A stretch of DNA of 64,000 nt from Octopus bimaculoides (taxonomy: Eukaryota). Every line of letters begins with the position of its first letter. The first letter of the stretch is position 1. This document shows, one piece after another, positions 4,301-27,065 of this stretch. A program made the translations under genes and the position numbers. The notes beneath the pieces are model-generated. The model did not search any database. It was not told the DNA's origin and was given only the letters and a program-made list of their open reading frames with translations. The stretch lies in the NCBI RefSeq assembly GCF_001194135.2, contig NC_068983.1, positions 118,314,050 through 118,378,049 on the forward strand, written 5' to 3'.

Positions 4301-4700
4301 NNNNNNNNNNNNNNNNNNNNNNNNNNNNNNNNNNNNNNNNNNNNNNNNNNNNNNNNNNNNNNNNNNNNNNNNNNNNNNNNNNNNNNNNNNNNNNNNNNNN
4401 NNNNNNNNNNNNNNNNNNNNNNNNNNNNNNNNNNNNNNNNNNNNNNNNNNNNNNNNNNNNNNNNNNNNNNNNNNNNNNNNNNNNNNNNNNNNNNNNNNNN
4501 NNNNNNNNNNNNNNNNNNNNNNNNNNNNNNNNNNNNNNNNNNNNNNNNNNNNNNNNNNNNNNNNNNNNNNNNNNNNNNNNNNNNNNNNNNNNNNNNNNNN
4601 NNNNNNNNNNNNNNNNNNNNNNNNNNNNNNNNNNNNNNNNNNNNNNNNNNNNNNNNNNNNNNNNNNNNNNNNNNNNNNNNNNNNNNNNNNNNNNNNNNNN

Positions 4701-4744
<44 letters not shown>

Positions 4745-5049
4745 GCACATACATACACATGTATATGCATATATGATGGTCTTTCAGTTTTCTGTTTTGG
4801 TATATCTGCACTTTCAACTTTCTCCTTATAATTTTTCACTCTTATCACAATTTCTAATATAATTATGAAGCAGCAGCTGAAATTGTTCTATGCAATGCTA
4901 CTATCTCTTCAAGCACATGTTCCTGCTGTCATTTTGGTGTATCCTTCATGTCTAATAGTATGAATAATGATATTACTAATGCTATTAATGCCTGAGAAAA
5001 TGAATTCACTTTACTTCCCCTCTTCTCAGCTCTCCCTAAATATTCACAG

Positions 5050-5245
5050 GACCCGAAATTTTTGGGGAGGGAGTCAGTCGATTAGATTGACCCCAGTATG
5101 CAACTGATATTAAATTTATTGACCCTGAAAGGATGAAAGGCAAAGTCGACCTCGGTGGAATTTGAACTCAGAACATAAAGATAGACAGTATACTGCTAAG
5201 CATTTCACTCGGCATGCTAACGTTTCTGCCAGCTTGCTGCCTAGC
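5050..5245 (-). mobile_element. SINE family M copy (GAGGTCGACTTTGCCTTTCATCCTTTC core)
   Basis: Reverse complement of the element at 6455-6645 and 7416-7590. Other copies at about 21845-22030 (+), 27105-27270 (-), 51430-51545 (-) and 52770-52965 (-). Confidence 0.8.
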
Positions 5246-5692
5246 TCTCCCTAAATATTGTGTAAGCTCTGTTTCCATTCTTCAAATTTCCCTGTTAATG
5301 ATTTGAAGCCTGTTTATATACTGGTCCACCTTTCATATAATTAATTCTTCCTATCAGTATATACCTATTATTTAACCATACCTTTATTCATTTCCTATCA
5401 AATATTTAACATATTAATAAAATCCTTAGCTCTAATATTAAGCTTATAGCATTCGTTACTCCCTCAGTAATTTAAATTATGCTGGAAAGTGTTCATTTAG
5501 ATGATTGATATTGCAGCACTATAATCAATTACTACAAGTGTGCATAACTGCATATCATTCCTCCTTGCCTATATAGTTAAAGTCTTGTGTCAGAAAATAA
5601 TTAAGTTACAAATATGTAGCAAGGAAATGTACTGACGAGATCTTTTTATGTACCATTAAATTATTTATGTTTGAGAGAGAGAGACACACACA

Positions 5693-5733
<41 letters not shown>

Positions 5734-6253
5734 CTTTAACATATAGCAAAGAAGGATGAGGAATTATCTTCAAATATAGGATATTTTTTCGATTTGTCAT
5801 TTCTTAAGAAATAATCTCATTTAAAAAAAAAAAAGACCTAAAATATCACAAGAATAATTATTTTTCCCTGTTAAATATGTTCACTTTGTTATTTTCAAAT
5901 ATGCCATAGTTTTATTCCATACACACATTGCTCATAATGTTTTGTATTAAGTTTTGGTATTGGTTTCTTTTTAAGCTTCATGTTAAAGTAAACGATTAAA
6001 GTAGTTTCTCAAAGTGATTTTTTTTTCTGTTTCATTCTGTTCCTTTTTTTCATTTTGTCATTGACATTTGGGTAGGAGATAATTCACCATATGACTTAAC
6101 GTCTTTGGGTGACTAGTATTCCGGCCAGGTATCTAGTCTCAGGCTAGCATACATCAGTCTCAGGAGCCCTGAATGGAACTTTTAAGTCTTGGGCACTACT
6201 CTTTCTCTTCTGGCTAAATAATAATAATAATAATAATATAAACCTATCATATG

Positions 6254-6442
6254 CTTCTTCTTCTTCTTCTTCTTCTTCTTCTTCTTCTTCTTCTTCTTCT
6301 TCTTCTTCTTCTTCTTCTTCTTCTTCTTCTTCTTCTTCTTCTTCTTCTTCTTCTTCTTCTTCTTCTTCTTCTTCTTCTTCTTCTTCTTCTTCTTCTTCTT
6401 CTTCTTCTTCTTCTTCTTCTTCTTCTTCTTCTTCTTCTTCTT
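6254..6442 (+). repeat. (TTC)n microsatellite, about 63 units
   Basis: Uninterrupted run. It is the source of the poly-E and poly-L ORFs. Confidence 0.98.
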
Positions 6443-6454
6443 CCTCTGGTGGCA

Positions 6455-6645
6455 TGCTGGAGAAATTGCTTAGCGGCGTTTCACCCGTCTTTACATTCTG
6501 AGTTCAAATTCCACTGAGGTTGCCTTTGCCTTTCAGTGTTTCGGGGTTGACGAATTGAGTACCAGTGAAACACTGGGGTCAATGTAATTGACTAGCCCTC
6601 TCTCTGGAAATTTCAGGCTTTGTGCCTTTAGTAGAAAGGATTATT
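6455..6645 (+). mobile_element. SINE family M copy
   Basis: Shares TGAGTTCAAATT...GCCTTT... and AGTACCAGTGAAACA...GATGTAATTGACTAG with 7416-7590. Confidence 0.8.
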
Positions 6646-7415
6646 ATTATTATTATATTATTTTGATATTTTAAAAGGATTGATGTAACTCTTCACAAAG
6701 GTAAACAAACAAGACGAAGAACTCAATGCAATTATAACTTTTTCTAGTTGGCATGCTTTCAGAAATGATAAATGGCTTTTGATTATAGCACGAAAACGAT
6801 TAAGTTTTTTCAACTGATAGAAAGTTGATTTTTCAATTTCTGATTTATATTTGAATCATACAAAATCCATTGGCCCAGGATTGGGCTCAACACTGAGGTC
6901 TAGCGAAACTAACAGGATTAACAAGCCATTTCTGGAAACATGCAAACTAGAAAAAGTTATAATCGCATCGCACTCTTTGTCTTGTCTGTTTACCTTTTTG
7001 AAGAGTTACGTCAATCCTTTTAGAATATCAAAATCAAGTAGACTGAGATGATTGTTTTCATGGTACACAGAAAAAGAATTGGAACATACAGAAATTCTGG
7101 AAGTTACCAAAGCAGCTGGGTGTCTAAGGAGAATCATAATGTAAATTACAGCTTTTGCATTTTATTCCTTCTTACAATTGGCTTGTCAACCTTGTTGGTT
7201 TCGCTAGACCCCAGTGTTGAGTCCAATCCTGGGCCAATGGATTTTGTACCATTCAAATATGAATCAGAAATTGAGAAATTGACATTTCTATCAGTTAAAA
7301 AACTAAACCTTTCCTCTCAAAGTTGTTGACTTTGTAATACAATTTAACACTATTATTATTATTATTATTATTATTATTAGCATTATTATTATTATTATTA
7401 TTATTATTATCATTA

Positions 7416-7590
7416 AGAAGGTGGCAAGCTGGCAGAATCGTTGATGAAATGCTTAGCGGTATTTCGCTTGTCACTACATTCTGAATTCAAATTCTGCCGA
7501 GGTTGACTTTAACTTTCATCCTTTCAGAGTTGATAAATTAAGTACCAGTGAAACATTTGGATTGATGTAATTGACTAGTCCCCTCCCACT
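7416..7590 (+). mobile_element. SINE family M copy
   Basis: Head AAGGTGGCAAGCTGGCAGAATCG plus the family core. It follows a (TAT)n run. Confidence 0.8.
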
Positions 7591-7742
7591 TGTTTTCTAA
7601 GAAAACTCATTAGTTTCTGCTAGATCTGAACTGATGAACATCTGAAATATGCATGCAAATTATTCAAAATATTTTTACTTTTAGCCTTCACAGAAGTTTC
7701 ATGCATGATTTAATTACAAATATATTTTTTATACTTTTGCAG

Positions 7743-7868
7743 AACTCTGCCCTTTATAAGCACCTTGTTGATGCAGGGGTTACTGATATACCAGTTGAGA
7801 AATCCACTAAAAGCTCTGAGCCTAAAGAGGACGTTGAAAATGAATCTGTTGCTGCTTTCCCACCAGAA
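7743..7868 (+). CDS. VEZT: Vezatin exon 2 (NSALYKHLVDAG...AAFPPE)
   Basis: Acceptor tttgcAG, donor GTtagt, 126 nt, phase 0/0. Matches the conserved NSxLYxxLxDxG motif. Confidence 0.9.
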
Positions 7869-8014
7869 GTTAGTTCCTCTTTATTTTCTCATAATTTATT
7901 TTTGTATCATTTTGTGTGGTTGTGACTGTGCGGTAAGAAGTGTGCTTCCCAACCACATGGTTTCCACTGCTTGGTACTTTGGACAAGTGTCTTATACTAC
8001 TATGCTGGGCTGCA

Positions 8015-8055
<41 letters not shown>

Positions 8056-8427
8056 CTCTGTCAGACATCAGATGGTGGTTATAAATGAGCATCATTATCA
8101 TGCAAGTGAGATTGTTCATTTTTAGTCTTCCTTGAAAACATGTTTACCTATGGGGAAAATATTACCTAGCTTAGACACATGAGAATTGACAACAGGAAGG
8201 GTGCCAAGCTGTAGAAATTCTGTCTCAACAGATTCTATCTGACCTATGCAAGTATGGAAAAGTAAACTGTAAATGATGATGGTGCTGCTGGTGATGATGA
8301 TGACAATGAAAATCTTAGCATTTGATTCATATTTTTTCCCACCTCTAAAACGTAAAGACTTGTGCTTTATCAAAAGAAACACTCTTTTCAACACACTTTT
8401 AACTTCATTTATTAATTTATTTTTCAG

Positions 8428-8523
8428 AAGCCTAACGATGTGCAAACTAATATGGAGCTTCTAAAACAGGTCTTTAGAAAACTGAAAGAGTTTTCATCAT
8501 TTGATCTTTTTATCATACAAATG
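8428..8523 (+). CDS. VEZT: Vezatin exon 3 (KPNDVQTNMELLKQVFRKLKEFSSFDLFIIQM)
   Basis: Acceptor tttttcAG, donor GTgagg, 96 nt open, phase 0/0. Sequence similarity is weak; the call rests on splice sites and phase. Confidence 0.65.
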
Positions 8524-9718
8524 GTGAGGTTTAATTATTTACTTTGATGATTTGTTGAGTTAATATTTCTTATTGATAAATAAGTTACCCAGAATATTTG
8601 TGACAAATGAAAATGATTCTTCACTGCTGAATATGGAACTCATGATTTTCATTTCTATCAGTTAGCAGAGTTCAGAGGAATTTTTTTTTGATACTACACC
8701 AAAATTATTAAGTAAAGAAGTATAGTAAGACATTGGTCAATCAGACAAGATAGGCAAGGAGTAATTATGTTTGGATGATTGATTTGATTGTAAACAAAGG
8801 AAGTCTTCTTGAAAGTGGGAGAAAGGGAGACCCCCATGAATGACAAAGTTCCCTGCTGAGGCACAAGTCCAGGCAAGGTTGTTTATAGAAGACCAGCAGT
8901 TGCTCCTCTATGCACCACTGATATTGCCCAAGGCAAAGGCTAATACAGCTTGGCACCAGTGATGTCGCAACTCATTTCTACAGCCAAGTGAACTAGAGCA
9001 ATGTGAAATAAAGTGTCTTGCTCAAGAACACAACACACAGCCTGGTCTGGGACTCAAACTTACTACCTCATGATTGTGAGCCTAATGCTCTAACCACTAT
9101 GTAAAAAAAGCATGTTTACAGAATTTTTGTCATTCAGTTGATAAAATGTATTCCTCTGCAATTTTCAATACTTTTTCACCATGATTCAGATGCTGTCAAA
9201 TTTTATTTTCTGTTTGATTATCAATGGCATTTCTTCCTCTTCTCAGACATAGTAACAACTGCAAACTTGAATACTTGAAACAGATATGGACTCGAAAGAA
9301 AGTGATAGTGTAAATAAAAGCACATCCTTAAGCATGTCTTATCATTTTGATGAGTTGAAATTATTTTAACACTGTTTAAAGTGTCAAAACAAATTAGTGA
9401 AACTGTTAACACGTATTTTTGGTAACTGTAAACAAAAGACAAGATCATCACTTATAATGTCGTTATGTGTTGCTCAATAATTTGAACTTATTTTTAATTA
9501 CAGTGAATAAAGTATGAAAAAGCAGTGCCAATATTAATCTTCAATTTGGGTTTCACATAGTTTGGATAATTAAATAATATTTACAGAAGCTTGAGGTCTT
9601 GTATCCCCAGATAACTGAAGTTTGACTGTATAAGATCACACTTTTTTTTCAGAATTAGTTATATTGAACATTTATCACTATACTGCACACATTGAGGAGT
9701 TTCCTTAGTGTGTGTGTG

Positions 9719-9756
<38 letters not shown>

Positions 9757-9875
9757 ATATTGAGTGCTATTTTCAAACTTATATTCTAGAAAAGCATACA
9801 TGTTGGCAGTTAATTTTCTTATTACAAATGAGAAATAAAGCACAGTTTTTTTTTTATTATTTTATACTTTTATAG

Positions 9876-10021
9876 TATTGCCATTTCAACTGTCAGATTC
9901 TACATCAAGTGGCTCACAGCAAATCTTTGGAAGATGATGATAAAATATTTCTAGAAAATTTCATAGTGGAAACAGAAAATGTAGGAAAGGCTTTGAAGCC
10001 TCAAACATTCATATTATGCTG
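9876..10021 (+). CDS. VEZT: Vezatin exon 4 (YCHFNCQILHQVAHSKSLEDDDKIFLENF...)
   Basis: Long T-tract with tatAG acceptor, donor GTaggt, 146 nt, phase 0/2, compatible with exon 5. Resembles the LHTILQQEVLLQEDVELIE region. Confidence 0.8.
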
Positions 10022-10439
10022 GTAGGTTGCAAAACTTCTGAAAACACTTTTCCCCTCTCCTAAAAAAGTTAGTAAAATGACTCATGCTGATACGGGAACT
10101 AGATGTTGAATAAGACACCCATAGTGTCACAGATAATTATATGCTTAAGGAATATGGATAAAAAAGATTACTGATAAATATCAATAATTTTTCTGTTTTG
10201 ATGATCTAATGCTATAAAACTGTAAAAAAAAAATTCCTTGAATGCTAAATTTATTCACAAAAACTATTGAGAAATATGTTACTTTTAGCTAATTATATAA
10301 ATTATTTAGAAAATGTATAGTATTTAGTGTTGGTAAGATTAATTCTAATAGTTTGTGTGGGCAGTTTAATGGATGGAAACTGCACAGTAGGCTGTCATCT
10401 ATCTGTTTGTATGTACATTACATGCACACACACTCACAT

Positions 10440-11320
10440 ATGCATATCATCATCATTGTCTCACATCCGTATTCCATGCTTGCATGGGTCAGACGGTTCA
10501 ACAGAATTCAATGATCCAGAGGCCTGTGTTGAATTCCAATGTCTGCTTTGGCATGGTTTCTTCAGTTGGCTGCTCTTTTTAATGTCAACCACTTTACAAG
10601 TATACTGGGGGCTTTTTTTGTGTTTGTCTCTCCGGTAGTAGTGAGATCACTGAGTAACTCATAAAACAGAATGGGGGTGCAGTATTGAGCGAGTTAGTTT
10701 TGTTAACAGATGTCTTGCTGTAGATGAGATATATGGCTACTCCTGTAGGAAAGGAAAAAGAATGGTGGAGATGAGGTGTCAGTATATACCCTCAAGGTAC
10801 AAGAAGGTGGATAAATAGAAAATTGAGGATGGGTTAGTGGGAGGGTTTGTTAGAGTGTGAAGGAAGAGTGATAGACGATTAAAGATGTGGATAGAGGTGA
10901 ATGCAGTGAATAATGAATATGGGCGGTGATGTAGATAATGGTTAATCTCAGTTTGGAGTGGGGAGGTAAAGGAAAATGGGAGGGGGTCAGGGAAGAGTAG
11001 GTGATAGATAGCAATATATAAAAAAGGGGTGGTGGAGAGTACCAGTATGATAAAACCATAGGGAGATGATGTCAAGTGAGGGAGAGAGAAGATGCACAGT
11101 GAAAAAGATGGAGGTCAGAGGTATGTAAGAGTGGATAAAGTGAGTAACAGAAGGGGCTGTTAGCAGGTATGAGAGGGTGTTTAGGGGAAAGGGGCATTCC
11201 GTGGAAAAGAAAGTGGTAAAGAATGGACGATAAGGGAAGTGGCTCCAAGGAAAGGGATAACTGGTAACATAAAGGCAGGAATGAGATATGTGCAGCTCTG
11301 CTCTCATATAATTACAGCAG
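10440..11320 (-). mobile_element. Old RTE-tail-related repeat with a long purine/pyrimidine-biased body
   Basis: Reverse (GAT)n-type tail at about 10440, then an RTE-3'-like segment and a strongly G/A-rich body. Similar bodies at about 22860-23150, 30020-30400 and 54480-54700. Confidence 0.55.
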
Positions 11321-11792
11321 CTGAGGAAATAGTGCCACAGTTAGAAAGACAAAAGATGAGTTGTGAGGAAGGCTTGACAAGTGCAGAATAGTGTGAGGCA
11401 TAGATATTAATGGTATATCTTTGAGACTTCATTATTTTTGCTGAAATAGACAAGTCTTCTTGAGTATGGCAGAGTGCCAATCACTTAGATCCTTTGTCAT
11501 TTCCTCAATGTATGTATATTTACTGTTTTTATTGTTTTTACTGTCTTGTTCTTGTTAACACTTTCACCCTCTGCAAAGAGCTGCCCAGACCCCATGTCTG
11601 GTTTGGCACGATTTCTATGGCTGGATGTGGAATTAGATGAAGACAGTTGAAGAATTGAGACCATGAAGGACTGAAGAATGGAGAGAGAAAATAAGTTCCT
11701 GTTCACAATGGAGGCAAGAGTTTGGATGGCCTCTGTGCAAGGCCACTCTGAACACAGATGGGTGTTACAGGGAATGATCAATCAAGTGAAAG

Positions 11793-12118
11793 TGGTGCAA
11801 GAGTGGCTTAGTGGTTAGGGTATTCCACTCATGATTGTAAAGTCGTGAATTCAATTCCCGGTGACGCATTGTGTCCTTGAGCAAAACACTTTATTTCATG
11901 TTGCCCCAGTCCACTCAGCTTGCAAAAATGAGTAGGACTTGTATTTCAAAGGGCCAGTCTTGTCGCACGCTATGTCACGCTGAATCTCTCTGAGAACTCT
12001 ATTAAGGGTACACATGTCTGTGGAGTGCTCAGCCACTTGCATGTTAATTTCATGAGTAAGCTGTTCTGTTGATCATATCAGCTGGGACCCTCATTGTCAT
12101 AACCAATGGAGTGCTCCT
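11793..12118 (+). mobile_element. tRNA-headed SINE, family R1
   Basis: A box TGGCTTAGTGGTTAGG and B-box-like GAATTCAATTCCC. The 3' half is homologous to the reverse complement of 35190-35360. Confidence 0.8.
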
Positions 12119-13494
12119 ACATATATATATATAGGGAATACAGTCACTCACCTTCACTTTCCTCTTTCAAATACTTCTTAATAGTGGGAGATTTTTTTGT
12201 TTCTTCTCTTCTCTTCCTTCTCTGTTCTTTTCTGTCTTGCAAGTTACATGACAACCACACCAGTGACAGTGGCACAAAATAAAAGGAGAACACCAAAACC
12301 ACCAAGTACACTCTGTAAAGGAGTTGGCATTAGGAAGGGCATTCAGCAATAGAGACCATGCTAAATATGACATTGAAGCTTGACACAGCCTTGCACCTTG
12401 ACTGGTTCCCCGTCAAACCGCCCCACCCCTGTCAACATGAAAAGTGGATGTCAAATGATGAATAAGCTTCCACACAATTTCCGTTTACCAAATTCACTCA
12501 CAAGGCATTGTTTAACCAACATACACACATACATATATATTACCTTACTTGGAATCAGGTGAAGGTTGAGGACAGGAAAGGCATCCACCCGTAAAATTTG
12601 TCTCAATAAATTCTGTCTAACCCATGTATGCCTGGAAGAGGGGGTGTTAAAATGATGATGATGTTTTATCACAACAACCAAAAAAAAAAAAATACACATA
12701 GATGGTGACAATAATGCAAGATTTTATCATCAAGATTATAGCAACAAGAGGCAGATACTCTACCTAAAGCAGTGTCAACAAAATAAAAATGGTGTACTAT
12801 GCTAATATGTTAACTAAAATACTGAGACATTGTTCATCGCTAAGTTGTAAATAAATTTACCTGCAGGTGTTTTAAGAAAGATAAATTTTGTCTCTCTGTG
12901 CAAATAGATCCTATAGTAAAACCTTAGAATGATGTGTAGTTATACTTATAAAATGGGTTGAAGTACATCTCAGCTAGGTTTTACTTATTCACAAGCTTAA
13001 CAAGAAATATTTACTTCATCTCTTCTTTTGAGAGGGCACAGTATACAGCTACTTATGAAAAATATAATGAACAATACTTCCTGCCTGTGGTCATTTGCAT
13101 ATCAGTACATTAGTTGGTGACACATATTAATTGAAGCATTGAGCTAGTGTATTTGTGGATAAGTTATGTGTACATTTAATGCAAAAGTGACTTCTTGCAT
13201 TTTTTATATGTAGCTCTGTAGTATACTCTCGTCCTCTCTGTTGAACAGGTGAAATAAACACTTCAGTTGTCTAAAATGTCCTTCAATTTTATTTTTAAAA
13301 TCATTCAGTAGGAAGTGTAGTTGCTATTTAGGTTAACAGATTCTAAATGTTGAGGAATTAATTTAGAAGACCTATCATTTTCCTTAGATTTTTCATTATA
13401 TATAATTCCTATGATACGATTTTTTCGATTGTCTCCATGATACGAAATGATTAAAATAACCAAAAACATGATTTATTCTGTTTTTATTTTTCAG

Positions 13495-13785
13495 TTTGTA
13501 CCCAATCCTTATCTTCCTTTCGCTGTATTTATTGTGCCTTTACAGTCCAGTGGCTGCTATTCTTATTATGAACCCAAACATTTGTTTGTTTCGAGCATTA
13601 GTAAAATTTTATATCCTCTTTCTGATTGTCCTCTCGCTTGGAATACTTTGGCACATATTAAATTTGAAACACACAACAAGCTGTATCAAAGCCCTTGTTC
13701 AACAGATTGAGGAGTCATACTTGCTTTTCAAGAAATCATTGCGATTGATTCAAGAAGTAGAACTTGTCCAAAGAGGATTTACATT
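13495..13785 (+). CDS. VEZT: Vezatin exon 5, with transmembrane segments and KKSLRLIQEVELVQRGFTL
   Basis: Acceptor ttttcAG, donor GTaagt, 291 nt, phase 2/2. Two hydrophobic stretches precede a motif matching vezatin RKALRLIQETEVISRGFTL. Confidence 0.95.
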
Positions 13786-14136
13786 GTAAGTGATAACTTC
13801 TGCATTTGAAAATTACCAAACATTAATTAATATCGTTTCAAAAGGAGAGAAAGTAATTTCTCTTGTTATTTGCTTTTTTTTTATATTCGATGATTATTTA
13901 ATCTTTTTGTGACTAAATTTATTTGCTGTAAATTTAAATCTTTAAAATTCTAATATATACATTAATATATACATTTTAATATATACATTACTTGTGACAG
14001 TTCTAAATTTGAACTTAAAATCTAAGCAGAATTAATAAAAATAACTCATATTATTTCAAACTTATTTGAAATTGTTTTAATACAAATTACTTTTGTGTGA
14101 TTCTTACTTGTAAGACCAAATTTCTTTACTTTGCAG

Positions 14137-14280
14137 GGTAAGCAGTCAGATGACTATAAAATCTGGACAGTCTGCTTACAAATACAATCGTCTTTGTCCT
14201 GAACTCCGTAAATTAGTTTTCATCACTGCTCGTAGTAATATGCTGTTTTGCCGGAAATCAACTAATATTCTCCTGAATAT
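14137..14280 (+). CDS. VEZT: Vezatin exon 6 (VSSQMTIKSG...CPELRKLVFITARSNMLFCRKSTNILLN)
   Basis: Acceptor ttgcAG, 144 nt, phase 2/2. Resembles VSAA...[25 protein letters not shown]. The donor is U12-type GTATCCTTTT. Confidence 0.92.
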
Positions 14281-14834
14281 GTATCCTTTTCTTGAATAGT
14301 TGCTGACCAGGTGGAAAGCTTAAATGTGGCTCTACATTAAAGTATTGCTAAGAAGGTGGTGTTGCTTTTATGCACTCATTATCTTGACTGAATCTTCCCT
14401 GTTACAATCCATAAAGTTGACTGATAAAGAACCATTCCCCAACACTCTACAACCACTAGCTCAGAGATGCAATTTTTCTTGTCTTCTACAACTATAACAG
14501 CTTGTGCTTCACTCACTTAAACAAGTGCATATTACTTTCACCCAAACTTATTTCTTTCTTTGTCCTTACAGTGTTTCATTCCTCTAAATTCAACACTAAA
14601 TGCTTTGCCTAAACCTTCTGAGCCACAATTATCTGAATTCCCTACATAAATGAACAATTTCCAAAATAAATATTCACTAAAATAATTCAGTAAAATTATT
14701 TTATTTCCAATTTTTTTAATACGAAAATGTTTATCCTCTCTTATTTGTTAGTGTGTTTTCCAAAATAATTTATATTCAGTGCAAATTATTAAACCAAACC
14801 ATTATGTTACTTTAGTTTTCTTGACTAACAAAAG
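14281..14834 (+). other. U12-type (minor spliceosome) GT-AG intron, vezatin intron 6
   Basis: 5' site GTATCCTTTT. Branch-like TTTTCTTGAC with the A at 14824, 10 nt before the end of the AG. No polypyrimidine tract (TAACAAAAG). Splicing gives ILLNI-HPL, aligning with YMLKN-YPL. Confidence 0.88.
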
Positions 14835-14982
14835 ACATCCATTAGTGGAAGAAGTAGATAAAGCATCTACTTATTTAGCACATATTCCTTTGGAAGATTA
14901 TGGACCAAGTCTGCAACTTAGTGAAGACAATAATGACAATTTAAGTAAACTGACTGATGACTTTTCTGTAACTGCTTTAAAG
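14835..14982 (+). CDS. VEZT: Vezatin exon 7 (HPLVEEVDKASTYLAHIPL...LTDDFSVTALK)
   Basis: 148 nt, phase 2/0, donor GTaagt. Matches YPL...YICVVP...FTDGFSLPALK. Confidence 0.93.
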
Positions 14983-15118
14983 GTAAGTTTTCTTTTAACT
15001 TTTCATAATAATAATTTACTGTAAAGGCAACCCCTTTGATTTAAAACCACATTTGTTTTTTCGTAATTGATATAAACATCGTTTCTTAAAGAATTTTTCC
15101 TACTTTGGTTTGTTATAG

Positions 15119-15212
15119 GCTATGATGTACCTGTATAATATGCAGCAATCAGAGCTTCTACGACGACTTGCTCTCTGTTTCTGTATCAATGCTCTTCCTG
15201 AAGATCAGAAAG
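15119..15212 (+). CDS. VEZT: Vezatin exon 8 (AMMYLYNMQQSELLRRLALCF...)
   Basis: Acceptor ttatAG, donor GTtaaa, 94 nt, phase 0/1. Matches QSSEFFRRLALLL. Confidence 0.92.
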
Positions 15213-15874
15213 GTTAAAAAATTTTTGTTAAATCTCATGATATTCTTATCAGAAAATATTTATTTTATTAAAACCATTTTCCATATAATTTCCCCTTTAA
15301 CGTTGCCATTCTGATTGGCATAGAATTAGTTCTTTATTTTCCTATCCATGACTTTCTTCTGATATGTGTCAGAAGGATTTGTAAATTTAAAATTTTCATA
15401 TGAATTGGTTTAGCTAACAAGTTCAAATTATTTAAAATAAATTGGTCATATTCCATTTCTGTTTCATTCAGCTGTATCTAATCTCTCTTTGGTAAAAGAT
15501 TTGGTTTTAAAAGTTAGACTTTCCTTTCCCCCATAGCATTAAATATATTCCGTTGTTTGAATTATTTGTATTCCTACTGATGCTGAACATCACAAATTTA
15601 CTAGGATTCTACTGTTACCACAAGCAGTGGTAACATTTTAATTTTTTTTACAACATAACAAAGCTGCTAACAAGATTTGAAGAAGTTTCAAGGCTTAAAT
15701 TTAAGACATTGTAGTCATTCAACTAGCAAATTAATTCCATGATATTTAAACCTTTTATTTCTATTCTTAGTTGCAGCTACTTCACATGAGTGGTCAGTAT
15801 AGTATAATATTTGCCAACCTTTTTGAAAATAGTATCATTTGTGAAATTATCCAACCAAGGGTCTAAGGTGATCA

Positions 15875-16080
15875 ATGCCAGGCCCGCCTGACTGGCTCTT
15901 GTGCCGGTGGCATGTAAAAAGCACCCACTACACTCTTGGAGTGGTTGGTGTTAGGAAGGGCATTCAGCTGTAGAAACATTCCCAGATCAGATTGGAGCCT
16001 GGTGCAGCCGCTGGCTCTCCAAACCTCAGTCAAACCGTCCAACCCATGCCAGCATGGAAAACAGACATTAAACAATGATT
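15875..16080 (+). mobile_element. RTE-tailed SINE family B, 3' part
   Basis: GGAAGGGCATTCAGCTGTAGAAA...CCAACCCATGCCAGCATGGAAA...TTAAACAATGAT, shared with many copies. Confidence 0.85.
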
Positions 16081-16197
16081 TGATGGTTATGAATACAAGA
16101 GGAGCATCATAAAAATACTCACATAGAAATAAAGCTTTGTTTTAAAAATAAAGTAAAATTAAATTTGTTTAGAAATAACGAAAACTTTTCTCTTAAT

Positions 16198-16994
16198 NNN
16201 NNNNNNNNNNNNNNNNNNNNNNNNNNNNNNNNNNNNNNNNNNNNNNNNNNNNNNNNNNNNNNNNNNNNNNNNNNNNNNNNNNNNNNNNNNNNNNNNNNNN
16301 NNNNNNNNNNNNNNNNNNNNNNNNNNNNNNNNNNNNNNNNNNNNNNNNNNNNNNNNNNNNNNNNNNNNNNNNNNNNNNNNNNNNNNNNNNNNNNNNNNNN
16401 NNNNNNNNNNNNNNNNNNNNNNNNNNNNNNNNNNNNNNNNNNNNNNNNNNNNNNNNNNNNNNNNNNNNNNNNNNNNNNNNNNNNNNNNNNNNNNNNNNNN
16501 NNNNNNNNNNNNNNNNNNNNNNNNNNNNNNNNNNNNNNNNNNNNNNNNNNNNNNNNNNNNNNNNNNNNNNNNNNNNNNNNNNNNNNNNNNNNNNNNNNNN
16601 NNNNNNNNNNNNNNNNNNNNNNNNNNNNNNNNNNNNNNNNNNNNNNNNNNNNNNNNNNNNNNNNNNNNNNNNNNNNNNNNNNNNNNNNNNNNNNNNNNNN
16701 NNNNNNNNNNNNNNNNNNNNNNNNNNNNNNNNNNNNNNNNNNNNNNNNNNNNNNNNNNNNNNNNNNNNNNNNNNNNNNNNNNNNNNNNNNNNNNNNNNNN
16801 NNNNNNNNNNNNNNNNNNNNNNNNNNNNNNNNNNNNNNNNNNNNNNNNNNNNNNNNNNNNNNNNNNNNNNNNNNNNNNNNNNNNNNNNNNNNNNNNNNNN
16901 NNNNNNNNNNNNNNNNNNNNNNNNNNNNNNNNNNNNNNNNNNNNNNNNNNNNNNNNNNNNNNNNNNNNNNNNNNNNNNNNNNNNNNNNNNNNNN
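16198..16994. other. Assembly gap (N); others at 4009-4700, 32318-32842, 39839-40700, 42062-42785, about 47070-47103, 47672-47681, about 49028-49075 and 56481-57074
   Basis: Runs of N, mostly bordered by microsatellites or SINEs. Confidence 0.99.
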
Positions 16995-17614
16995 GCCTGA
17001 CTGGCTCTTGTGCCGGTGGCATGTAAAAAGCACCCACTACACTCTTGGAGTGGTTGGTGTTAGGAAGGGCATTCAGCTGTAGAAATGAGTTGCAACATTA
17101 CTGGTGCCAAGCTGTATTGGCCTTTGCTTTTCCCTTGGATAACATTGGTGACATAGGCAACTGCTGATCTTCCATAAACAACTTTGCTCAAACTTGTGCC
17201 TCAGAGGGTAACTTTCTAGGTGCAATCCCATGGTCATTCATGGCCAAAGGAGGTCTTTCACCCTTTTACTGATTAGTTTGAGTGTTTAATAAGTATGATT
17301 CTTATAAGACAATAATTAGAAATAATCTTCCAGAATTGGAAATAAATAAGTTGAGTTAGTTCCATTGAAACCCGAATGAGGCAAATATATTGATAAAATC
17401 ACAGAATATCAATCACATTGATCAATATATGCAAAAATTATGACCTGCATTGCTGTAGATACAGAAGGGAACATGTAATATATGTTGTATAAGCAAGTAT
17501 GAGAATAAAAAGTATCTACAGATGAGGTAGGCAAAAGAGGAGTTAAATTAACTCTTGAAATATTGGATCTCACAGGTCTGATAACACAATAGAATGCAAA
17601 TATACACAAGGTAT

Positions 17615-17858
17615 TATTTATCCCCATTTAAACGTGGATGTTCTGTTAGAACAAACTATACTGCAGTAGATGCCATGAGAGAAACTCATATTGGCTTTTG
17701 GTGCAGAATGCACTCTTGTTTATATCACAGTTATAAGCAAGAATGCATTTGTGCATTTTACATTTTGCACCAAAAGCAAATATGAGAGTTTCTCTCATGG
17801 TATTTACCTCTGTATAGTTTGTTCTAACAGAACATCCACGTTTAAGCAGAGATAAATA
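17615..17858. repeat. Fold-back palindrome, about 244 bp (MITE-like)
   Basis: AAACGTGGATGTTCTGTTAGAACAAACTATA pairs with TATAGTTTGTTCTAACAGAACATCCACGTTT. Pairing continues inward to a loop of about 7 nt, with one bulge. Confidence 0.9.
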
Positions 17859-17961
17859 TTTCTTCTCGGTATTAAGACTGCCTCCGTTGCTAATATATAT
17901 ACATCAGATATATCTTTAAGCACTGTTTTATCCTTTTTTTTTTTTTGACTTTTTTTCTAAG

Positions 17962-18179
17962 GTCATCAAATTTGAGTTCTGAATTTGAAAAATATTTCGA
18001 AGTAAATGCAGAAAATGTTATAAGCAACGACGAACAAAATGAGTGTGAAATTACTGCCAAAGAAAATCAATGGTACTCTCACTTACAATCAATAAAAGCT
18101 GAACTTGAGGCCTGCCGTGCTTGTTATGAAATTGGCTTGGACAAATTTGAAAAGATGTTCAAAAAGCAGCAAGAGCCAA
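17962..18179 (+). CDS. VEZT: Vezatin exon (provisional 10; ...HLQSIKAELEACRACYEIGLDKFEKMFKK...)
   Basis: T-tract with ctaAG acceptor, donor GTatgt, 218 nt, phase 2/1. Aligns loosely with [24 protein letters not shown]. Confidence 0.8.
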
Positions 18180-21100
18180 GTATGTATTCTATTATGAAAT
18201 TGTAAAAACTTAAAGATATTGTATCTATTGTTCTAGGTCTATGGTTAAACAGTTTTCATAACAAAATTCAATCCTGAATTTTATATGAACATAAAGGTAG
18301 ACAGCTCAAAATAATGATTTCTAGCCATTGAACTTAGTAATGTATTTCTATTAATGGTTCAAGAATTTAATATCATTTATAGTTACCATCTCTATCATAT
18401 GCAATATCCCATGTTATTTTAAACTGGACCTATCTTCATTGCAGAACATATTTTTTTTATTATCTCGTATCATTTCGTCATTGCTACTTAAACTTGAATT
18501 AACTACCGTTTTTTGTGTTTTTTTCTTATTCTTATTTTACCCACATTTTCCTGTAGTTCATACCATTTTGCCATATAAATAATAAATATTATTATTGACT
18601 CCAATGGTGATAGAAAAACCCTCCAAAAAACTGCTCTGTTTATATCTATCAGTTGATAAATACTGTTACAGTTGTCTCCCTTGAACTTTTAAACAAAAAA
18701 CCTAACTTCAGGAACTTGTATGGACAATCATGCCTTCAAAATATACTCCACAATGAATAATAACATAACGATTTCTAGCTTTAGTACAAGACCCCAAAAT
18801 TTGCTAGGAAGTCATATAATAAATCTTTCACAATATATTACTAGTACTTATTTAATCTATAAAAAAAGATTAACTATGTTGCCATTGTAGAAGTAGGTGA
18901 ACATTTTTTCATGAAAATGTAATAATTCATGAAAAAAAGGATCCTTATTATTATTATTAAGTACCAAAGAGGGATTATCTAAGAGATTACTTGGTCTGCT
19001 AGAAAATAGCCAAATATTCCCTAAATGTAAAGAGTTACTGAATAATGTAGTCCATTGCTTGAAAGACAAATAAGTGGAGTGGTCATCACTGAAATGCTTT
19101 TGATCATAGGTTTCCTCAACTGACGCTGATCTGGGGATATACAGTAAAGGAACAGTTAAATAGGATACTTAGCTGCTGATGAAATACCAACATCAGATTG
19201 AAACTAGTCTAGCTGATCATTACTTTTCTATCCACAAATACATTGTATATGAAAACAAAGTGTGTACAGCTGTCTGTACATACAGTATTGGCTAAAAACC
19301 CATAGATGATATAGTTATTCTACAGCACAGTAGAGCATTAAAACAAAATACTGCTGACTAGCAATTAATTTATTTAGTTAATGGATCTCCATTGACAATG
19401 AACATTCCAGTTGTTAGGTTAACTGAACGATGCACTCTTGAATTATAGTGTAAGAGTTCTTGTGCCTTTACTATAATTCTCAGGCAATCTAATCTGCTTC
19501 TCCATCTTTTCTGTCTATCTAATTTCACACTCATTGCTGTGGTAAAGGTTACTTGTCTTTGATGCCATACATTGGGTTTGAACCCAGGATCTTTTGATTG
19601 CAAAATAAACTTCTTAACCACTCAGGAATGCCTGCATCCTGAAGATATACAGTTACAATTGAGAAATCCCTTAACCCTTTGTGGGTTGTTGGGGTGCTGC
19701 AGCCATGCAACGTATCTAGGGTGAGAAAGCCTGGTGGAGCCCATCCCTCTCCAGGCTAAACTCATTTCTACAGCTGAATGAACTTGAGTAATGTGAAATG
19801 AAGTGTTTTGCTCAAGAACACAATGGATCACCCAGTCGAGGAGTTGAAACCACAATCTTACAGTTGGGAATCCAACACCCTAACCACTAAGTGACACTAG
19901 TGGTACTCATTTCTACAGCTGAGTGGACTGGAGCAACATGAAATGAAGTGTTTTGCTCAAGAACACAACGCTTTGGCTGGTTCAGGAATCAGAACCACAA
20001 TCTTACAATCGTGAGTCCAGCATCCTAACCACTAAGCCATGTGCCTCCACCTAGCCATGCTCTTCCAGCTAAACATATAAAAACCTTATTTTTTTTTAGA
20101 TTAAATAATGGATTCTTTGCATTGTTAAGTACAACATCATGTCATCATTATGATGATGATGATCATTGTTTTAACATTCACTGTTCTTTGTTTTCATGCA
20201 TTAGGTTAAATGAAATTGTGTTGAGGCAAGTTTTTTAATAGTTGGATGCTCTTCCTGTCTCCAACCTTCCCCTGTTTCAAAGTAAAGTAAAATTTACCCT
20301 AATCTTTTGGACACTCTATGGTTCAGGTATTGGATAAGCTTTCACGGAGGATTGCTAACAAATTACACTGTTTTTCCTTGATGGTAATTTTGTTTACAGT
20401 CAGTGTGTTATACATCAGGACAAGGAGAAATGCGCACTCATACCTTGTCGTTGTCGGCTATCCATCGTAGGTAGACATTGGCTGTTCTTGTTCAGTAATC
20501 ATCTCCAGCAGGCTCGCATGTGGGCTACAAGGCCTGCTCTTGATCTGCAGCCGCGATGATCTCTGCTGCAGGTGAATCTACTTCATGCAACAGAGAAATG
20601 ACTCTTTTCATGCGCTCTTTCATATTCCCTCTGTTGTTTCTTCTCAGTGGCTGGAATTATGAGCTTCAGTGATCAGTGCCATTCATTGCACTACTTGGCC
20701 TTCTCTTCCCAGGTGTCTGGAGAGATGCTGGAGTTCTTCAGCACATCCCTGTATTGCAACCTCTGGCCACCATGGCTCTGCTTGCCCTAATGCAGTTCAG
20801 GGTGGAAAACTGTCTCTGAGACTCTGCTGCTCTCCATCCTTTCCACTATATCCTTTCCACCGCCTTCCCCCAGCACAGCATAGGATGTCTACATCAGGAA
20901 TGTGATCCTGCCATTTGTTATGCAAGATGGAGCGTAGATGACAAAGTTGGTCTTGTATCAGGGCCTTAATGTACCAGCAGCAGAGGACCATGCATTTTGT
21001 GACATAGAGGAGTCAAGGGAGCACTGAAACACTGTACACCTTGAAGGTTATTGTGGCCAAGTGGAAGATATGCACCATCACACAATGGTTGGGCACCAAC

Positions 21101-22523
21101 TAGCAAATGAGTTGCTACTGTAGGGCAGCCCCACTCACACATGCACCACACAGATACATGCATATATATCATCAATATCATCATCATTTTAATATCCACA
21201 TTTTTATGCTTGCACAGGTTCGATAGAATTTGGTATATTTTCTATGACTGATACCATTTCTGTCACTAACATTCACTGTTTCTAAGTAAGGTAATATTTT
21301 CGCATGACCAAACATGTTTTCATGGAAGATTGGAAACAGAGGACACCATTTGTAGTGCACCTGAGCACTCTACACAATAATTTCATTATCATTTGTAAAG
21401 CAATGACACTTGTTTGTGATATTAAGACAAGGAGACACCAATACATAAACACACATATACATATATGATGGGCTTCTTTCAGTTTCCATCTACCAAATCC
21501 ACTTACAAAGCTTTGATTTAGCCCGTGATCCACCAGTACTTTGCAGGTGAACTTGGTTGCAGAAAACTGTATGAATGCCTGTTGTATATATGTGTGTGTT
21601 TATATGCATACATTTTTGTGTTTGTCTATCACCACTTGACATTCTGTGTTGGTTTGTTTACATCCCTGTAATTTAGAAGTTCAGCAAAATTAGAGTGACA
21701 TGATAAATACTAGACTTAAAGAATAAGAACTATGGTCATTTTGATCACAATCCAAAGACTGAAATTGGTAAAAATGTAATCATTATGATGTATGTATGGA
21801 GCATCAAATTTGCATGATTAGTAATGAATGTTTTGATGTTGTAAGGCAGTGAGCTGGCAGAATCATTAAAACACCAGGCAAAATGCTTAGTATTCTGAGT
21901 TAAAATTCTTCCGAGGTTGACTTTACCTTTCATCCTTTTGGGATTGATAAAATAAGTACCAGTTGATCACTGGAGTTGATGTAATCGGCCCACCCCATCT
22001 CCCCAAATTGCTGGTTTTGTGCCACAATTTGAAACCAATATTTTGATGTATAAACATTTTTTTTGATTATTGTATTCTTAAATTTCACAAGCAAGGACCT
22101 TCTTTTAATTAGAAATTGCTTTGATATTTTAACTAAAGAAAATTAATTGATTTGAGAAAATGGTTTAAAACTTTTTTCCATTCTGGACCCAGGTAATAAT
22201 ACTCAGTGTTTCTTTTAAGTGACTTTGCCTATGGATTATTGAATGAAGTAGATGAAACAAATACCTATCAATGATTATTATATTTATGGTCTATCAAGTC
22301 AACTTATTAACATGATAAAACTTGTAGATCATTAAGTTCGTAATAAATTAGGCAGATGAATGAAACTTTATCTAATTTTCCTAACTGCACAACACTGTAG
22401 CTATATAGTTTACTTATAATTTATGTTCAAAACTGAAAATATTACCCTTGCTATTCTTTTAATTTCTTTATTTCAGTGTAAACAAATTTATTTGTTTAGT
22501 GAAATCATCATATGAACAAATTC

Positions 22524-22573
<50 letters not shown>

Positions 22574-23686
22574 TACACGCCTGTGTGTGTGTGTGTTTGT
22601 GTATTGTCATCACTACACCACCGTCATCATTTAATATTCACTCTCCATGTTGTCATGGGTCAGATGGTTCAAAAGGATCTGGCAAGCCAGAGGACTGTGC
22701 TAGGATCCAATGTCTGCTTTGGCATGGTTTTATATGACTGGATATCCTTCCTAATGCTCACCAACTTACAGAGTGTACAGGGTGCTTTTTATGTGGCACA
22801 TGTGTGTGTAAGGAATTGTGCTAACATTGATATATAATCATTTGATCCCTCTGGCCCATGTATAAGTGGCTACATTGGAGCACTTATGCCTACTTCTACC
22901 CTCCCTCCTGTACTGCTGGTCATCTTCCTGTGTCAGTCAGCCTGCCAACTTTTTCTTGCTCTTTTTTCCCAATACTTCCTGGGTTCCTGTCATCTCTCAA
23001 TCTCCTAGGTAACAGATTTCTGTCACCTCTCTGCCATCTTAGTCATACTGCTTTCGATATACATACCCATCTCACAATACTAAACTCTCCATTACTCCCT
23101 CTCTGTCATACTTCCATGACTAACATTCATGCTGCTATCACTTACACTTCTTATTTCTGTAAAGCAGTTTGGCCAGTGAGCAGAGAAATGTGTTCATGGA
23201 AATAGTTAACTCTCCCGTAGTGGTGTCACAAAAAATGCCTCCCATATATTCTGTAAAAGGTGTGGTTGTGTGGACCTTTTAGCCTTGTCGAAGACGTGAC
23301 ACTTTTCTAATACTGGTACCTTGAAAAAAAGCACCCAGTACACTCTCTAAAGTGGTTACAGTTGGGAAGGGTATCCAATCATAGAAACCAACATGAAAAT
23401 GAAACACTAGTTCCCTAGCCCATTTAACTGAGTGCTGCCTCTGAATTAGTACTGATTCCAACTGTGACACCCCATCCAAACCATGCCAGCATGGAAAGTC
23501 AATATAAAATGATACATATAATATAAATGTGTGTGTGTGTGTGTGTGTGTATAAAGAATTGAGCAAGCTATGATATATGATGTAATTACATCATTTTTGT
23601 TTATTTTAGATTAAAAAAACATTCCGACTGAAATTAAGCATTGCTTTGAATGAGAATATTATCTTAAAGTTATATTTCATTTTTAG

Positions 23687-23775
23687 CTCCAAAACTTAAT
23701 CCGAAAATTAATACCAAAGAAAAAGATGAGAAAATAATTTGTGCTGAAGATATCAATCCAGTAATTGTTGATGAG
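23687..23775 (+). CDS. VEZT: Vezatin exon (provisional 11; ...EDINPVIVDE)
   Basis: Acceptor ttttAG, donor GTaaat, 89 nt, phase 1/0, compatible with both neighbours. Resembles DKDPIPEEQ. Confidence 0.8.
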
Positions 23776-24084
23776 GTAAATTTTTAAATATTGCAGTTAA
23801 AGACCAAGCTCTTTTTCTTATACAGACCAAAGTTAATTTTGGGATGGAGATGAGGAGTGGCTTACATGAGTTGCTGAAATTCTAACCCTTGATATTAAAT
23901 ATATTTATTAACCTCTTTTTACTTCTCATATTTTGTAAATAATTTTAATTTCTAAATTCACATTGTGTATAAAGAAATGCTGAGAAGTAAATCTAAAATT
24001 TTAATCTCATGTTTATGTAAACCATTCATATTACATTCAGTTCATACAGTTTGTTAAGTATTTTCTGTGATTGCATACAATGCC

Positions 24085-24440
24085 TATTTCATCGCCTTCC
24101 TGGCACTTGTGCCGGATGGCACGTGTAAAGACATTCAAGCGAGATCGTTGCCAGTGCCGCCGAACTGGCTCCTGTGCAGGTGGCACGTAAAATACACCAT
24201 TTTGAGCGTGGCCGTTGCCAGTACCGCCTGACTGGCCCTCATGCCAGTGGCACGTAAACGCATCCACTACACTCTCAGAGCAGTTGGTCTTAGGAAGGGC
24301 ATCCAGCTGTAGAAACTCTGCCAAATCAGATTGGAGCCTGGTGTAGCCATCTGGTTTCATCAGTCCTCAGTCAAATCGTCCAACCCATGCTATCATGGAA
24401 AGCGGACGTTAAACGACGACGATAATGATGATGATGATTT
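24085..24440 (+). mobile_element. RTE-tailed SINE family B, young copy
   Basis: CpG-intact, ends in GTTAAACGACGACGATAATGATG. About 90% identical by eye to the reverse complement of 29590-29960. Confidence 0.9.
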
Positions 24441-24950
24441 AAATTAGTTCATGTTTTGTATTTCTGTTTATACATGTATATCACATACAGTTTGTATGGT
24501 TCTGTTTGTAATGTAGAATGTTTGTATTTAATTCAGAGAGTAAGCTCACACTTTTCCCTATATGCATATCATAATCATATATGAAATATAGTTTGTATTT
24601 ATTTAAGCAATACCTTTGAAATTCATTTCAATTATATCCCGATTATATTTGATTAAATGGCAGGATATCAAAATAATTTTTTGAAACTCCTTGCTTGTGT
24701 TTAATATACTAACATAATGTTTTCAAATGTGCTGACTTATGCTGTGGAATTTCCATGGATTATCTTTATTAAAGCTTACCTACTTCAAATGGGAACAAAA
24801 AGTCTATAGTCAAGTATCAATAAATTTCATGCATATTAACATACGTAATTTTATGAGGGAGAAATGTTTAAAATAAAATATAGAATTAGAAAGAAAACAC
24901 AAAACCAAAAGAAGGCATCACAGGTAGTGTCTAATTTAATAAATGTGAAG

Positions 24951-26769: not shown

Positions 26770-27065
26770 GTCTTTTAGTCATATATGTTTGACGTCTACT
26801 ATGTCATTGATGTAGATAATGAAGAGGAGTGGGCTCAACACAGTACCTTGTGGGACACCACTACTGACTTTGGCTGAGCTTGACCGTATTCGCTCAAACA
26901 CAACATGTTGGGTTCTGTTTATCAGGAAACATTTTATCCACTGCAGTAGCTTTCCATGGACTCCAATGTTGGACAGTTTCTTCAGCAGGATTTTGTGGTC
27001 CACTCTGTCAAATGCCTCGCTGAAATCAAGGTATATGACGTCATTGTTGGAGCCTTCTCCCAAAG
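26770..27065 (-). mobile_element. CR1/L2-like non-LTR retrotransposon reverse-transcriptase fragment
   Basis: The ORF reads DVIYLDFSEAFDRVDH...SGVPQGTVLSPLLFIIYINDI, i.e. RT motifs of the CR1/L2/Jockey group. Confidence 0.9.

What the first reader, a model, noticed from the sequence alone, without database searches (positions are those of the whole stretch)
14281..14834. U12 minor-spliceosome intron in a cephalopod-like vezatin gene
Seen: a GTATCCTTTT donor, a TTTTCTTGAC branch-like motif 10 nt from the 3' AG, no polypyrimidine tract, and an in-frame join at a conserved ...N-[HY]PL site. All other donors located are U2-like. Established: RTATCCTTT and TTCCTTRAC are the U12 consensus signals, minor introns can limit expression rate, and predictors often miss them. 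Inference: the intron is ancient and position-conserved. I recall vertebrate VEZT being listed as a minor-intron gene but cannot confirm it.
Basis: partly seen in the sequence, partly recalled or inferred. Interest (0 to 1): 0.7.

Follow-up and report, generated by a model that had tools for sequence, protein, structure and literature searches.

The report
U12-type intron in octopus vezatin
Intron 6 of the Octopus bimaculoides vezatin gene has minor-spliceosome (U12-type) splice signals and sits where a snake VEZT intron of the same type sits, so it is a correct but ordinary catch.

Summary
The window is the Octopus bimaculoides vezatin locus. A 14-exon model on the + strand reproduces RefSeq XP_014769151.2 exactly, and that protein already uses the junction 14280^14835.

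Intron 6 (14281-14834, 554 nt, phase 2):
- It starts with GTATCCTTT. This is the only copy of that 9-mer on either strand of the 64 kb.
- It has TTTCTTGAC, 8/9 to TTCCTTRAY, with the presumed branch A at 14824, 10 nt before the 3' end.
- It ends in an A-rich stretch rather than a pyrimidine tract.
- The other 12 introns are U2-like.
- On a U2 weight matrix built from 90 other vezatin introns, its donor and acceptor both fall in the lowest few.

An intron at the same codon position and phase is:
- U12-type in O. sinensis, cuttlefish, Lottia and Mya (all GT-AG) and in a snake (AT-AC);
- U2-type in Haliotis;
- absent in Ptychodera.

A cuttlefish mRNA contig shows exact excision of the orthologous intron. 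Papers list VEZT as a minor-intron gene in human and mouse.

Not shown here: octopus junction reads, or dependence on the U11/U12 snRNPs. This is an orthologue of a known minor intron. Interest is low.

The parts
1338..37117 (+). Vezatin coding region. 14 exons: 1338-1376, 7743-7868, 8428-8523, 9876-10021, 13495-13785, 14137-14280, 14835-14982, 15119-15212, 15771-15792, 17962-18179, 23687-23775, 28213-28287, 33626-33863, 36258-37117 (includes the stop).
   Evidence: The concatenated exons translate exactly to XP_014769151.2 / P0007, 861 aa plus stop. tblastn mapping. Pfam PF12632 Vezatin, E=4e-17.
14137..14280 (+). Exon 6 (144 nt). Ends ...CTG AAT AT, leaving 2 nt of the Ile codon. The base at -1 is T.
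   Evidence: The only donor/acceptor pair that reproduces the RefSeq protein is 14280/14835.
14281..14834 (+). Intron 6: 554 nt, phase 2, GT-AG, U12-type signals.
   Evidence: The orthologous introns are listed.
14281..14289 (+). U12-type 5' splice site, GTATCCTTT (9/9 to RTATCCTTT).
   Evidence: Unique in the window on both strands. Identical in O. sinensis, cuttlefish and Lottia. Scores 2.4 bits on the U2 donor matrix, against a mean of 7.5 and sd of 2.3.
14817..14825 (+). Branch-site motif TTTCTTGAC (8/9 to TTCCTTRAY). The presumed branch adenosine is 14824, 10 nt before the intron end.
   Evidence: Identical in O. sinensis. It is TTTCTTAAC, at the same spacing from the AG, in a more distant relative of unidentified species known only from a sequencing-run contig, 82% identical to the window (L001).
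14826..14834 (+). 3' end TAACAAAAG: an A-rich spacer and the AG acceptor, with no pyrimidine tract between branch site and AG.
   Evidence: Scores 0.1 bits on the U2 acceptor matrix, against a mean of 8.7 and sd of 3.7.
14835..14982 (+). Exon 7 (148 nt). Starts A CAT CCA TTA (completing Ile, then H-P-L) and ends AAG|GTAAGT.
   Evidence: The same exon appears in the L001 relative (P0001).

Best explanation
Intron 6 of O. bimaculoides vezatin is a GT-AG U12-type intron that the minor spliceosome removes.

Inferred mechanism:
- U11, and later U6atac, pair with GTATCCTTT at 14281-14289.
- U12 pairs with TTTCTTGAC at 14817-14825. The C-to-T difference from the consensus becomes a G-U wobble, and the G sits in the R position of the consensus.
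- A14824 bulges out as the branch point.
- The first AG 10 nt downstream is used, without a pyrimidine tract.
- Exon 6 is joined to exon 7 as AAT AT|A CAT.

The intron is the orthologue of the vertebrate VEZT minor intron and has been inherited from at least the bilaterian ancestor. It has switched subtype between lineages: AT-AC in the snake, GT-AG in molluscs. In some lineages it was converted to U2-type or lost.

Shown here: the signals, the junction, the positional orthology, and splicing of the cuttlefish orthologue. Inferred: the snRNA pairings, the branch nucleotide, and dependence on the minor spliceosome.
For: - Signals at the exact exon boundary, and the in-frame join.
- Uniqueness of the donor 9-mer in the window.
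- Rarity of a correctly spaced branch motif.
- Donor 9/9 against at most 7/9 in 89 other introns of eight vezatin loci, apart from one Mya GTCTCCTTT.
- Low-tail scores on the U2 matrix: only 1 of 90 introns has a lower donor score and 2 of 90 a lower acceptor score.
- T at -1 and phase 2, both typical of GT-AG U12-type introns according to PMC7367187.
- Same column and phase with U12 signals in O. sinensis, Acanthosepion, Lottia, Mya and Notechis.
- The first 13 nt and last 40 nt of the intron are identical between O. bimaculoides and O. sinensis. The interior has been rearranged and is 4.6 times longer in O. sinensis.
- The cuttlefish mRNA contig L014 (SRR6517992) joins GGAATA|TTATCC, exactly removing the GTATCC...CAG intron of L008.
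- VEZT is a listed minor-intron gene.
- Molluscs, including Octopus sinensis, are comparatively rich in minor introns (PMC10639083).
Against: - No octopus RNA reads were available. The junction rests on the RefSeq model, on homology and on the cuttlefish transcript.
- No intronIC or SpliceRack matrices were on hand, so the U12 score is a consensus match plus a home-made U2 matrix.
- The branch motif is one base off the consensus and contains TTGAC, which also fits the U2 branch consensus. PMC8848931 reports that a similar motif (GGTCTTGAC in Tsta3) recruits U2.
- Presence of U11/U12/U4atac/U6atac in O. bimaculoides was not checked here. No snRNA gene lies in the window.
Confidence: 0.9

Rival explanations
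1. The intron is real but the major (U2-type) spliceosome removes it. On this reading the U12-like motifs are relics that have not yet decayed, as on the path that led to the U2-type intron in Haliotis.
For: - It has GT-AG ends.
- Haliotis rubra has a U2-type intron (GTAAGG plus a pyrimidine tract) at the same site, so conversion did happen in molluscs.
- Class conversion from U12 to U2 is documented (PMC7367187).
Against: - Donor and acceptor both lie in the lowest few of 90 U2-type vezatin introns.
- The base at -1 is T, not G.
- The full 9-mer donor and the correctly spaced branch motif are kept in lineages that diverged long ago: octopus, cuttlefish, limpet, clam and snake. Relics not under selection would not persist like that.
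- There is no pyrimidine tract next to the AG.
Confidence: 0.06
2. Splicing is of mixed dependence. The 5' splice site is read by U11/U6atac, but the suboptimal branch site TTTCTTGAC can also be engaged by U2 snRNP, as reported for some mouse minor introns.
For: - The motif is 8/9 to the U12 consensus and contains TTGAC, which fits the U2 YTNAY consensus.
- PMC8848931 shows U2 involvement for the Tsta3 branch site GGTCTTGAC.
Against: - The single mismatch keeps pairing with U12 through a G-U wobble (inference from the established U12 anti-branch sequence).
- Cuttlefish has a perfect TTCCTTAAC, so nothing specific to the lineage points to a need for U2.
- This was not tested.
Confidence: 0.03
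3. There is no intron here. The junction is an annotation artefact, and the region is continuous exon or an assembly error.
For: None found, apart from the fact that the RefSeq model is computational.
Against: - Read-through meets a stop after 6 codons.
- The spliced product is colinear without gaps with eight other vezatins.
- The intron exists at the same place in six other genomes.
- The orthologous intron is absent from a cuttlefish mRNA.
Confidence: 0.01

Closest known systems
Vertebrate VEZT minor intron (listed as a minor-intron gene in human; mouse Vezt; seen here in Notechis scutatus, L007 18008-18174)
   Same: - Same gene family.
- Same alignment column and phase 2, just before the [HY]PL motif.
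- Consensus RTATCCTTT donor.
- Branch motif close to the 3' end and no pyrimidine tract (PMC6865273, PMC8848931).
   Different: - The snake intron is the AT-AC subtype (ATATCCTTTT...AAC) and is 167 nt long. The octopus intron is GT-AG and 554 nt long.
- The position of the human and mouse intron was not read directly here. It is only inferred from the snake.
Orthologous U12-type GT-AG introns of other molluscs (O. sinensis, Acanthosepion pharaonis, Lottia gigantea, Mya arenaria)
   Same: GTATCCTT[TC] donor, branch motif 10-12 nt from the AG, and the same position and phase. Excision is confirmed in a cuttlefish transcript.
   Different: - Branch motifs differ: TTCCTTAAC in cuttlefish, TTCCTTATC in Lottia, AAACTTAAC in Mya, TTTCTTGAC in the octopuses.
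- Lengths range from 239 to 2553 nt.
U2-type intron at the same site in Haliotis rubra (an example of U12-to-U2 class conversion)
   Same: Same position and phase, with TTTCCTT kept just before the CAG.
   Different: The donor is GTAAGG, the base at -1 is G, and there is a clear pyrimidine tract. It is a major-spliceosome intron.

Membership tests
U12-type (minor-spliceosome) intron | 5' splice site matching RTATCCTTT from intron position +1 | tested here: met
   GTATCCTTT at 14281-14289 is 9/9 and is the only copy in the window.
U12-type (minor-spliceosome) intron | Branch-site motif TTCCTTRAY with the branch A about 8-20 nt from the 3' splice site | tested here: met
   TTTCTTGAC at 14817-14825 is 8/9, with the A 10 nt from the intron end. 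Such a match precedes only 0.3-0.5% of AG dinucleotides in the window.
U12-type (minor-spliceosome) intron | No polypyrimidine tract between branch site and acceptor, and poor fit to U2 signals | tested here: met
   The spacer is TAACAAAAG. On the U2 matrix the donor scores 2.4 bits (mean 7.5) and the acceptor 0.1 bits (mean 8.7). The matrix was built from only 90 vezatin introns.
U12-type (minor-spliceosome) intron | GT-AG or AT-AC termini, non-G at -1 and a non-zero phase (statistical tendencies of GT-AG U12 introns) | tested here: met
   GT-AG, T at -1, phase 2. The tendencies are described in PMC7367187.
U12-type (minor-spliceosome) intron | Orthology to an accepted U12-type intron | tested here: met
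   Same column and phase as the AT-AC intron of snake VEZT and the U12-type introns of four other molluscs. VEZT is listed as a minor-intron gene.
U12-type (minor-spliceosome) intron | Splicing depends on U11, U12, U4atac and U6atac snRNPs | not testable with these tools
   This needs knock-down or blocking experiments, or lariat mapping.
U12-type (minor-spliceosome) intron | The organism has a minor spliceosome | not tested
   Literature only: molluscs, including Octopus sinensis, carry many minor introns (PMC10639083). No snRNA gene lies in the window.
U12-type (minor-spliceosome) intron | The junction is used in the organism's own transcripts | tested here: inconclusive
   Both RefSeq versions, XP_014769151.1 and .2, use it, and a cuttlefish mRNA shows the orthologous excision. 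No octopus transcript was found.
Vezatin (Pfam PF12632) | Significant match to the Vezatin domain, and orthology to named vezatins | tested here: met
   PF12632 at E=4e-17. The exons are 100% identical to 'vezatin [Octopus bimaculoides]'. There are 138 homologues, including vertebrate vezatins.

The most novel reading that the evidence does not exclude
The first nine bases of the downstream exon copy the U12 donor in exactly the same register. Against GTATCCTTT they read TTATCCTTT in cuttlefish, ACATCCTTT in Lottia and ACATCCATT in octopus. That is 5-8 of 9 identical, against a median of 2 and a maximum of 6 in 90 control introns.

This could be a trace of the intron's birth by tandem duplication of a TATCCTT-containing segment. 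It could also be a second U11-binding site that affects splicing. The plainer explanation is that [HY]-P-L codons happen to spell the motif.
Probability: 0.07. Interest if true: 0.5.

Novelty: already known. Interest (0 to 1): 0.15.

Why it matters
It matters little on its own. VEZT is a catalogued minor-intron gene, molluscs are known to keep many minor introns, and RefSeq already annotates this junction.

The finding does have three modest uses:
- It shows that a reader of raw sequence can recognise a U12-type intron correctly.
- It gives a tidy worked example of minor-intron evolution at a single site. The intron is AT-AC in a vertebrate and GT-AG in cephalopods, a limpet and a clam. It was converted to U2-type in abalone and is absent in an acorn worm. 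A spider carries only an intronless, retrogene-like vezatin copy, which says nothing about the site.
- It marks an intron that gene predictors without U12 models could miss in cephalopod genomes.

Tried and rejected
- The first protein search, with the 128-aa spliced peptide, found only a genomic read-through fragment from a relative. The word index is lossy: it missed the octopus proteins that contain this exact peptide.
The search was later run with P0007.
- The locus look-up for Haliotis isoform X2 failed because only the longest isoform is on record. Isoform X1 worked.
- The third protein search, aimed at octopus transcript-derived proteins, found none. There is therefore no direct octopus RNA evidence.
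- The Rfam scan of the window found nothing.
- No supplements are held for PMC8848931, so the mouse intron sequence and number could not be read.
- No paper links U12-type introns with cephalopods by those words.
- The Argiope locus was uninformative because the gene is intronless.
- The alternative acceptor at 14815 was rejected because it gives an in-frame TAA. Exon read-through was rejected because it meets a stop.
- Mya intron 9 (GTCTCCTTT) matches 8/9 at the donor. It was not taken as U12-type, because it lacks A at +3 and has a pyrimidine tract and a distant branch motif.

Full report
**What is in the sequence.** The + strand reads ...CTGAATAT|GTATCCTTTTCTTG at 14280/14281. It reads ...TTAGTTTTCTTGACTAACAAAAG|ACATCCATTAG at 14834/14835. 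Exon 6 (14137-14280) follows a normal TTTGCAG acceptor. Exon 7 (14835-14982) ends at AAG|GTAAGT. Joining the two keeps the frame, AAT AT|A CAT, which is N-I-H. Reading on into the intron gives a stop after six codons. Using the nearer AG at 14815 gives an in-frame TAA. The joined peptide matches Pfam Vezatin (PF12632) across the junction at E=1.9e-9, and at 4e-17 once the neighbouring exons are added.

**Which gene and organism.** A protein search with the spliced model returned a cluster that contains XP_014769151.2, 'vezatin [Octopus bimaculoides]'. Fourteen exons between 1338 and 37117 translate to exactly that 861-aa protein. The RefSeq locus L006 (GCA_001194135.2, CM046603.1) maps to the window with a constant offset of 337. 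RefSeq therefore already uses the junction 14280^14835. The older model XP_014769151.1 has the same peptide. Only one donor/acceptor pair reproduces the protein at this junction.

**Is the intron U12-type?** Of the 13 introns, only intron 6 begins with GTATCCTTT. The others begin with U2-like donors such as GTAAGT, GTAGGT, GTATGT or GTTAGT, and most have a T-rich tract before the AG.
- The 9-mer GTATCCTTT occurs once in the window on both strands, against 0.59 expected anywhere. The 8-mer RTATCCTT occurs nine times, so the 8-mer alone is not rare.
- The best branch motif is TTTCTTGAC at 14817-14825. It is 8/9 to TTCCTTRAY, and its A lies 10 nt from the intron end.
- A motif that good, 8-15 nt before an AG, precedes only 0.3-0.5% of AG dinucleotides in the window.
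- I mapped eight vezatin genes onto their genomic loci, which gave 96 introns. Among those not at this site, no donor matches more than 7/9, except one Mya GTCTCCTTT that lacks the essential A at +3.
- A leave-one-out U2 matrix was built from the 90 introns lacking an RTATCCT donor start. On it the octopus donor scores 2.4 bits (mean 7.5, sd 2.3; one of the 90 is lower). The acceptor scores 0.1 bits (mean 8.7, sd 3.7; two are lower).
- The T at -1 and the phase of 2 fit the known tendencies of GT-AG U12-type introns (PMC7367187).
- I could not run intronIC or the published U12 matrices, so this is a consensus-plus-outlier argument and not the standard score.

**Conservation.** A protein alignment places an intron at the same column and phase in seven of the eight mapped genes. 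The ends, are:

| Species | Donor | 3' end |
|---|---|---|
| O. bimaculoides, O. sinensis | GTATCCTTTTCT | TTTTCTTGACTAACAAAAG |
| Acanthosepion pharaonis | GTATCCTTTATA | TTTCCTTAACAGAATTTCAG |
| Lottia gigantea | GTATCCTTTATC | TTTCCTTATCCTATCCTAG |
| Mya arenaria | GTATCCTTCC | AACTTAACTTAAACTCTAG |
| Notechis scutatus (snake) | ATATCCTTTTAA | ACCTTAACACTAAGTAAAC (an AT-AC intron) |
| Haliotis rubra | GTAAGGGG | TTTCCTTCCAG (a U2-type intron) |

- Ptychodera flava has no intron at this site.
- The Argiope bruennichi gene is intronless and lies inside another gene.
- Between the two octopuses, the first 13 nt and the last 40 nt of the intron are identical. The interior differs in length (554 against 2553 nt) and contains a roughly 290-bp segment in opposite orientation.
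- Contigs from a more distant relative of unidentified species (L001-L004, 82% identical) keep TTTTCTTAAC at the same spacing from the AG.
- The pattern is the usual one for an ancient minor intron. The signals are under constraint, the AT-AC and GT-AG subtypes have switched, and there has been occasional conversion to U2-type or loss.

**Transcript evidence.** A 3,214-nt contig from run SRR6517992 (L014) encodes a 983-aa cuttlefish vezatin. It aligns exon by exon at 99-100% to the A. pharaonis locus. It reads ...TTGGAATA|TTATCCTTTG..., which is exact removal of the GTATCC...TTTCAG intron. No octopus transcript could be retrieved.

**Literature.** VEZT is named among human minor-intron-containing genes in PMC6865273. 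Mouse Vezt is cited as a minor intron with a perfect consensus donor in PMC8848931. That paper also gives the consensus sequences RTATCCTTT and TTCCTTRAY, and shows that suboptimal branch sites lower efficiency or bring in U2. PMC10639083 reports that molluscs are comparatively rich in minor introns and uses Octopus sinensis in its conservation matrix. PMC7367187 supports one-way U12-to-U2 conversion.

**Mechanism (inferred).** U11, then U6atac, pair with the donor. U12 pairs with TTTCTTGAC, using one G-U wobble, and A14824 is bulged out. The AG 10 nt downstream is chosen by distance and not through a pyrimidine tract. Minor introns are often spliced slowly, but no evidence here bears on whether this one limits vezatin expression.

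**Verdict.** This is the octopus orthologue of a catalogued minor intron and is already present in RefSeq, so it is already known in kind. Confidence that it is a real intron at these coordinates is about 0.97. Confidence that it is U12-dependent is about 0.9.

Noticed in passing
window 15771-15792 and N gap 16198-16994; L013 43607-43829: The RefSeq O. bimaculoides model contains a 22-nt microexon (VAATSHEW). O. sinensis instead has a 223-nt exon with the same length modulo 3. That exon encodes a segment conserved in Haliotis (...AVHSLDLHLQA...) and has no match anywhere in the window. The true exon probably lies in the assembly gap, which would make XP_014769151.2 about 67 aa short.
   Followed up: partly
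window 14835-14843; also L008 30181-30189 and L009 4094-4102: The downstream exon begins with a copy of the U12 donor in the same register. It reads ACATCCATT in octopus, TTATCCTTT in cuttlefish and ACATCCTTT in Lottia. That is 5-8 of 9 identical to the donor, against a median of 2/9 and a maximum of 6/9 in 90 control introns. The [HY]-P-L codons at least partly explain it.
   Followed up: partly
window 14355-14644 vs L013 38978-39270: About 290 bp inside intron 6 lie in opposite orientation in O. bimaculoides and O. sinensis (91% identical). The O. sinensis intron is 2553 nt against 554 nt. This is either a real inversion or indel, or an assembly difference. The segment is single-copy in both loci.
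   Followed up: partly
L005 5531-8185 (Haliotis rubra): Abalone has a U2-type intron (GTAAGG plus a pyrimidine tract) at the same position and phase. It keeps TTTCCTT just before the CAG, which may be a relic of the U12 branch site. This looks like a U12-to-U2 class conversion.
   Followed up: partly
L005 8398-9784 and 17457-18162 (Haliotis rubra): Two introns of the abalone gene hold long tandem arrays of copies of the neighbouring exon ends. One array repeats ...MYHLTDGYSVAALK about 20 times. The other repeats QVFEAYTD[PL]DEV about 10 times.
   Followed up: no
L011 (Argiope bruennichi): The spider vezatin-like gene is a single 2226-nt open reading frame lying within the range of an Xaa-Pro aminopeptidase gene. 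It is probably a retrogene, so it says nothing about the intron site.
   Followed up: no
L010 (Ptychodera flava): The hemichordate vezatin has no intron at the U12 site, although it shares most other intron positions. The intron was probably lost there.
   Followed up: no
P0085 / P0194 (Craspedida sp. UC1): A vezatin homologue (E=5.8e-10) comes from a choanoflagellate data set, so the family may predate animals.
   Followed up: no
window, whole: The window is a draft-quality scaffold. It has nine N gaps (the largest are 4009-4700, 16198-16994, 32318-32842, 39839-40701, 42062-42785 and 56481-57074) and abundant TA/CA/AGC-type microsatellites. No Rfam family reaches its gathering threshold.
   Followed up: no
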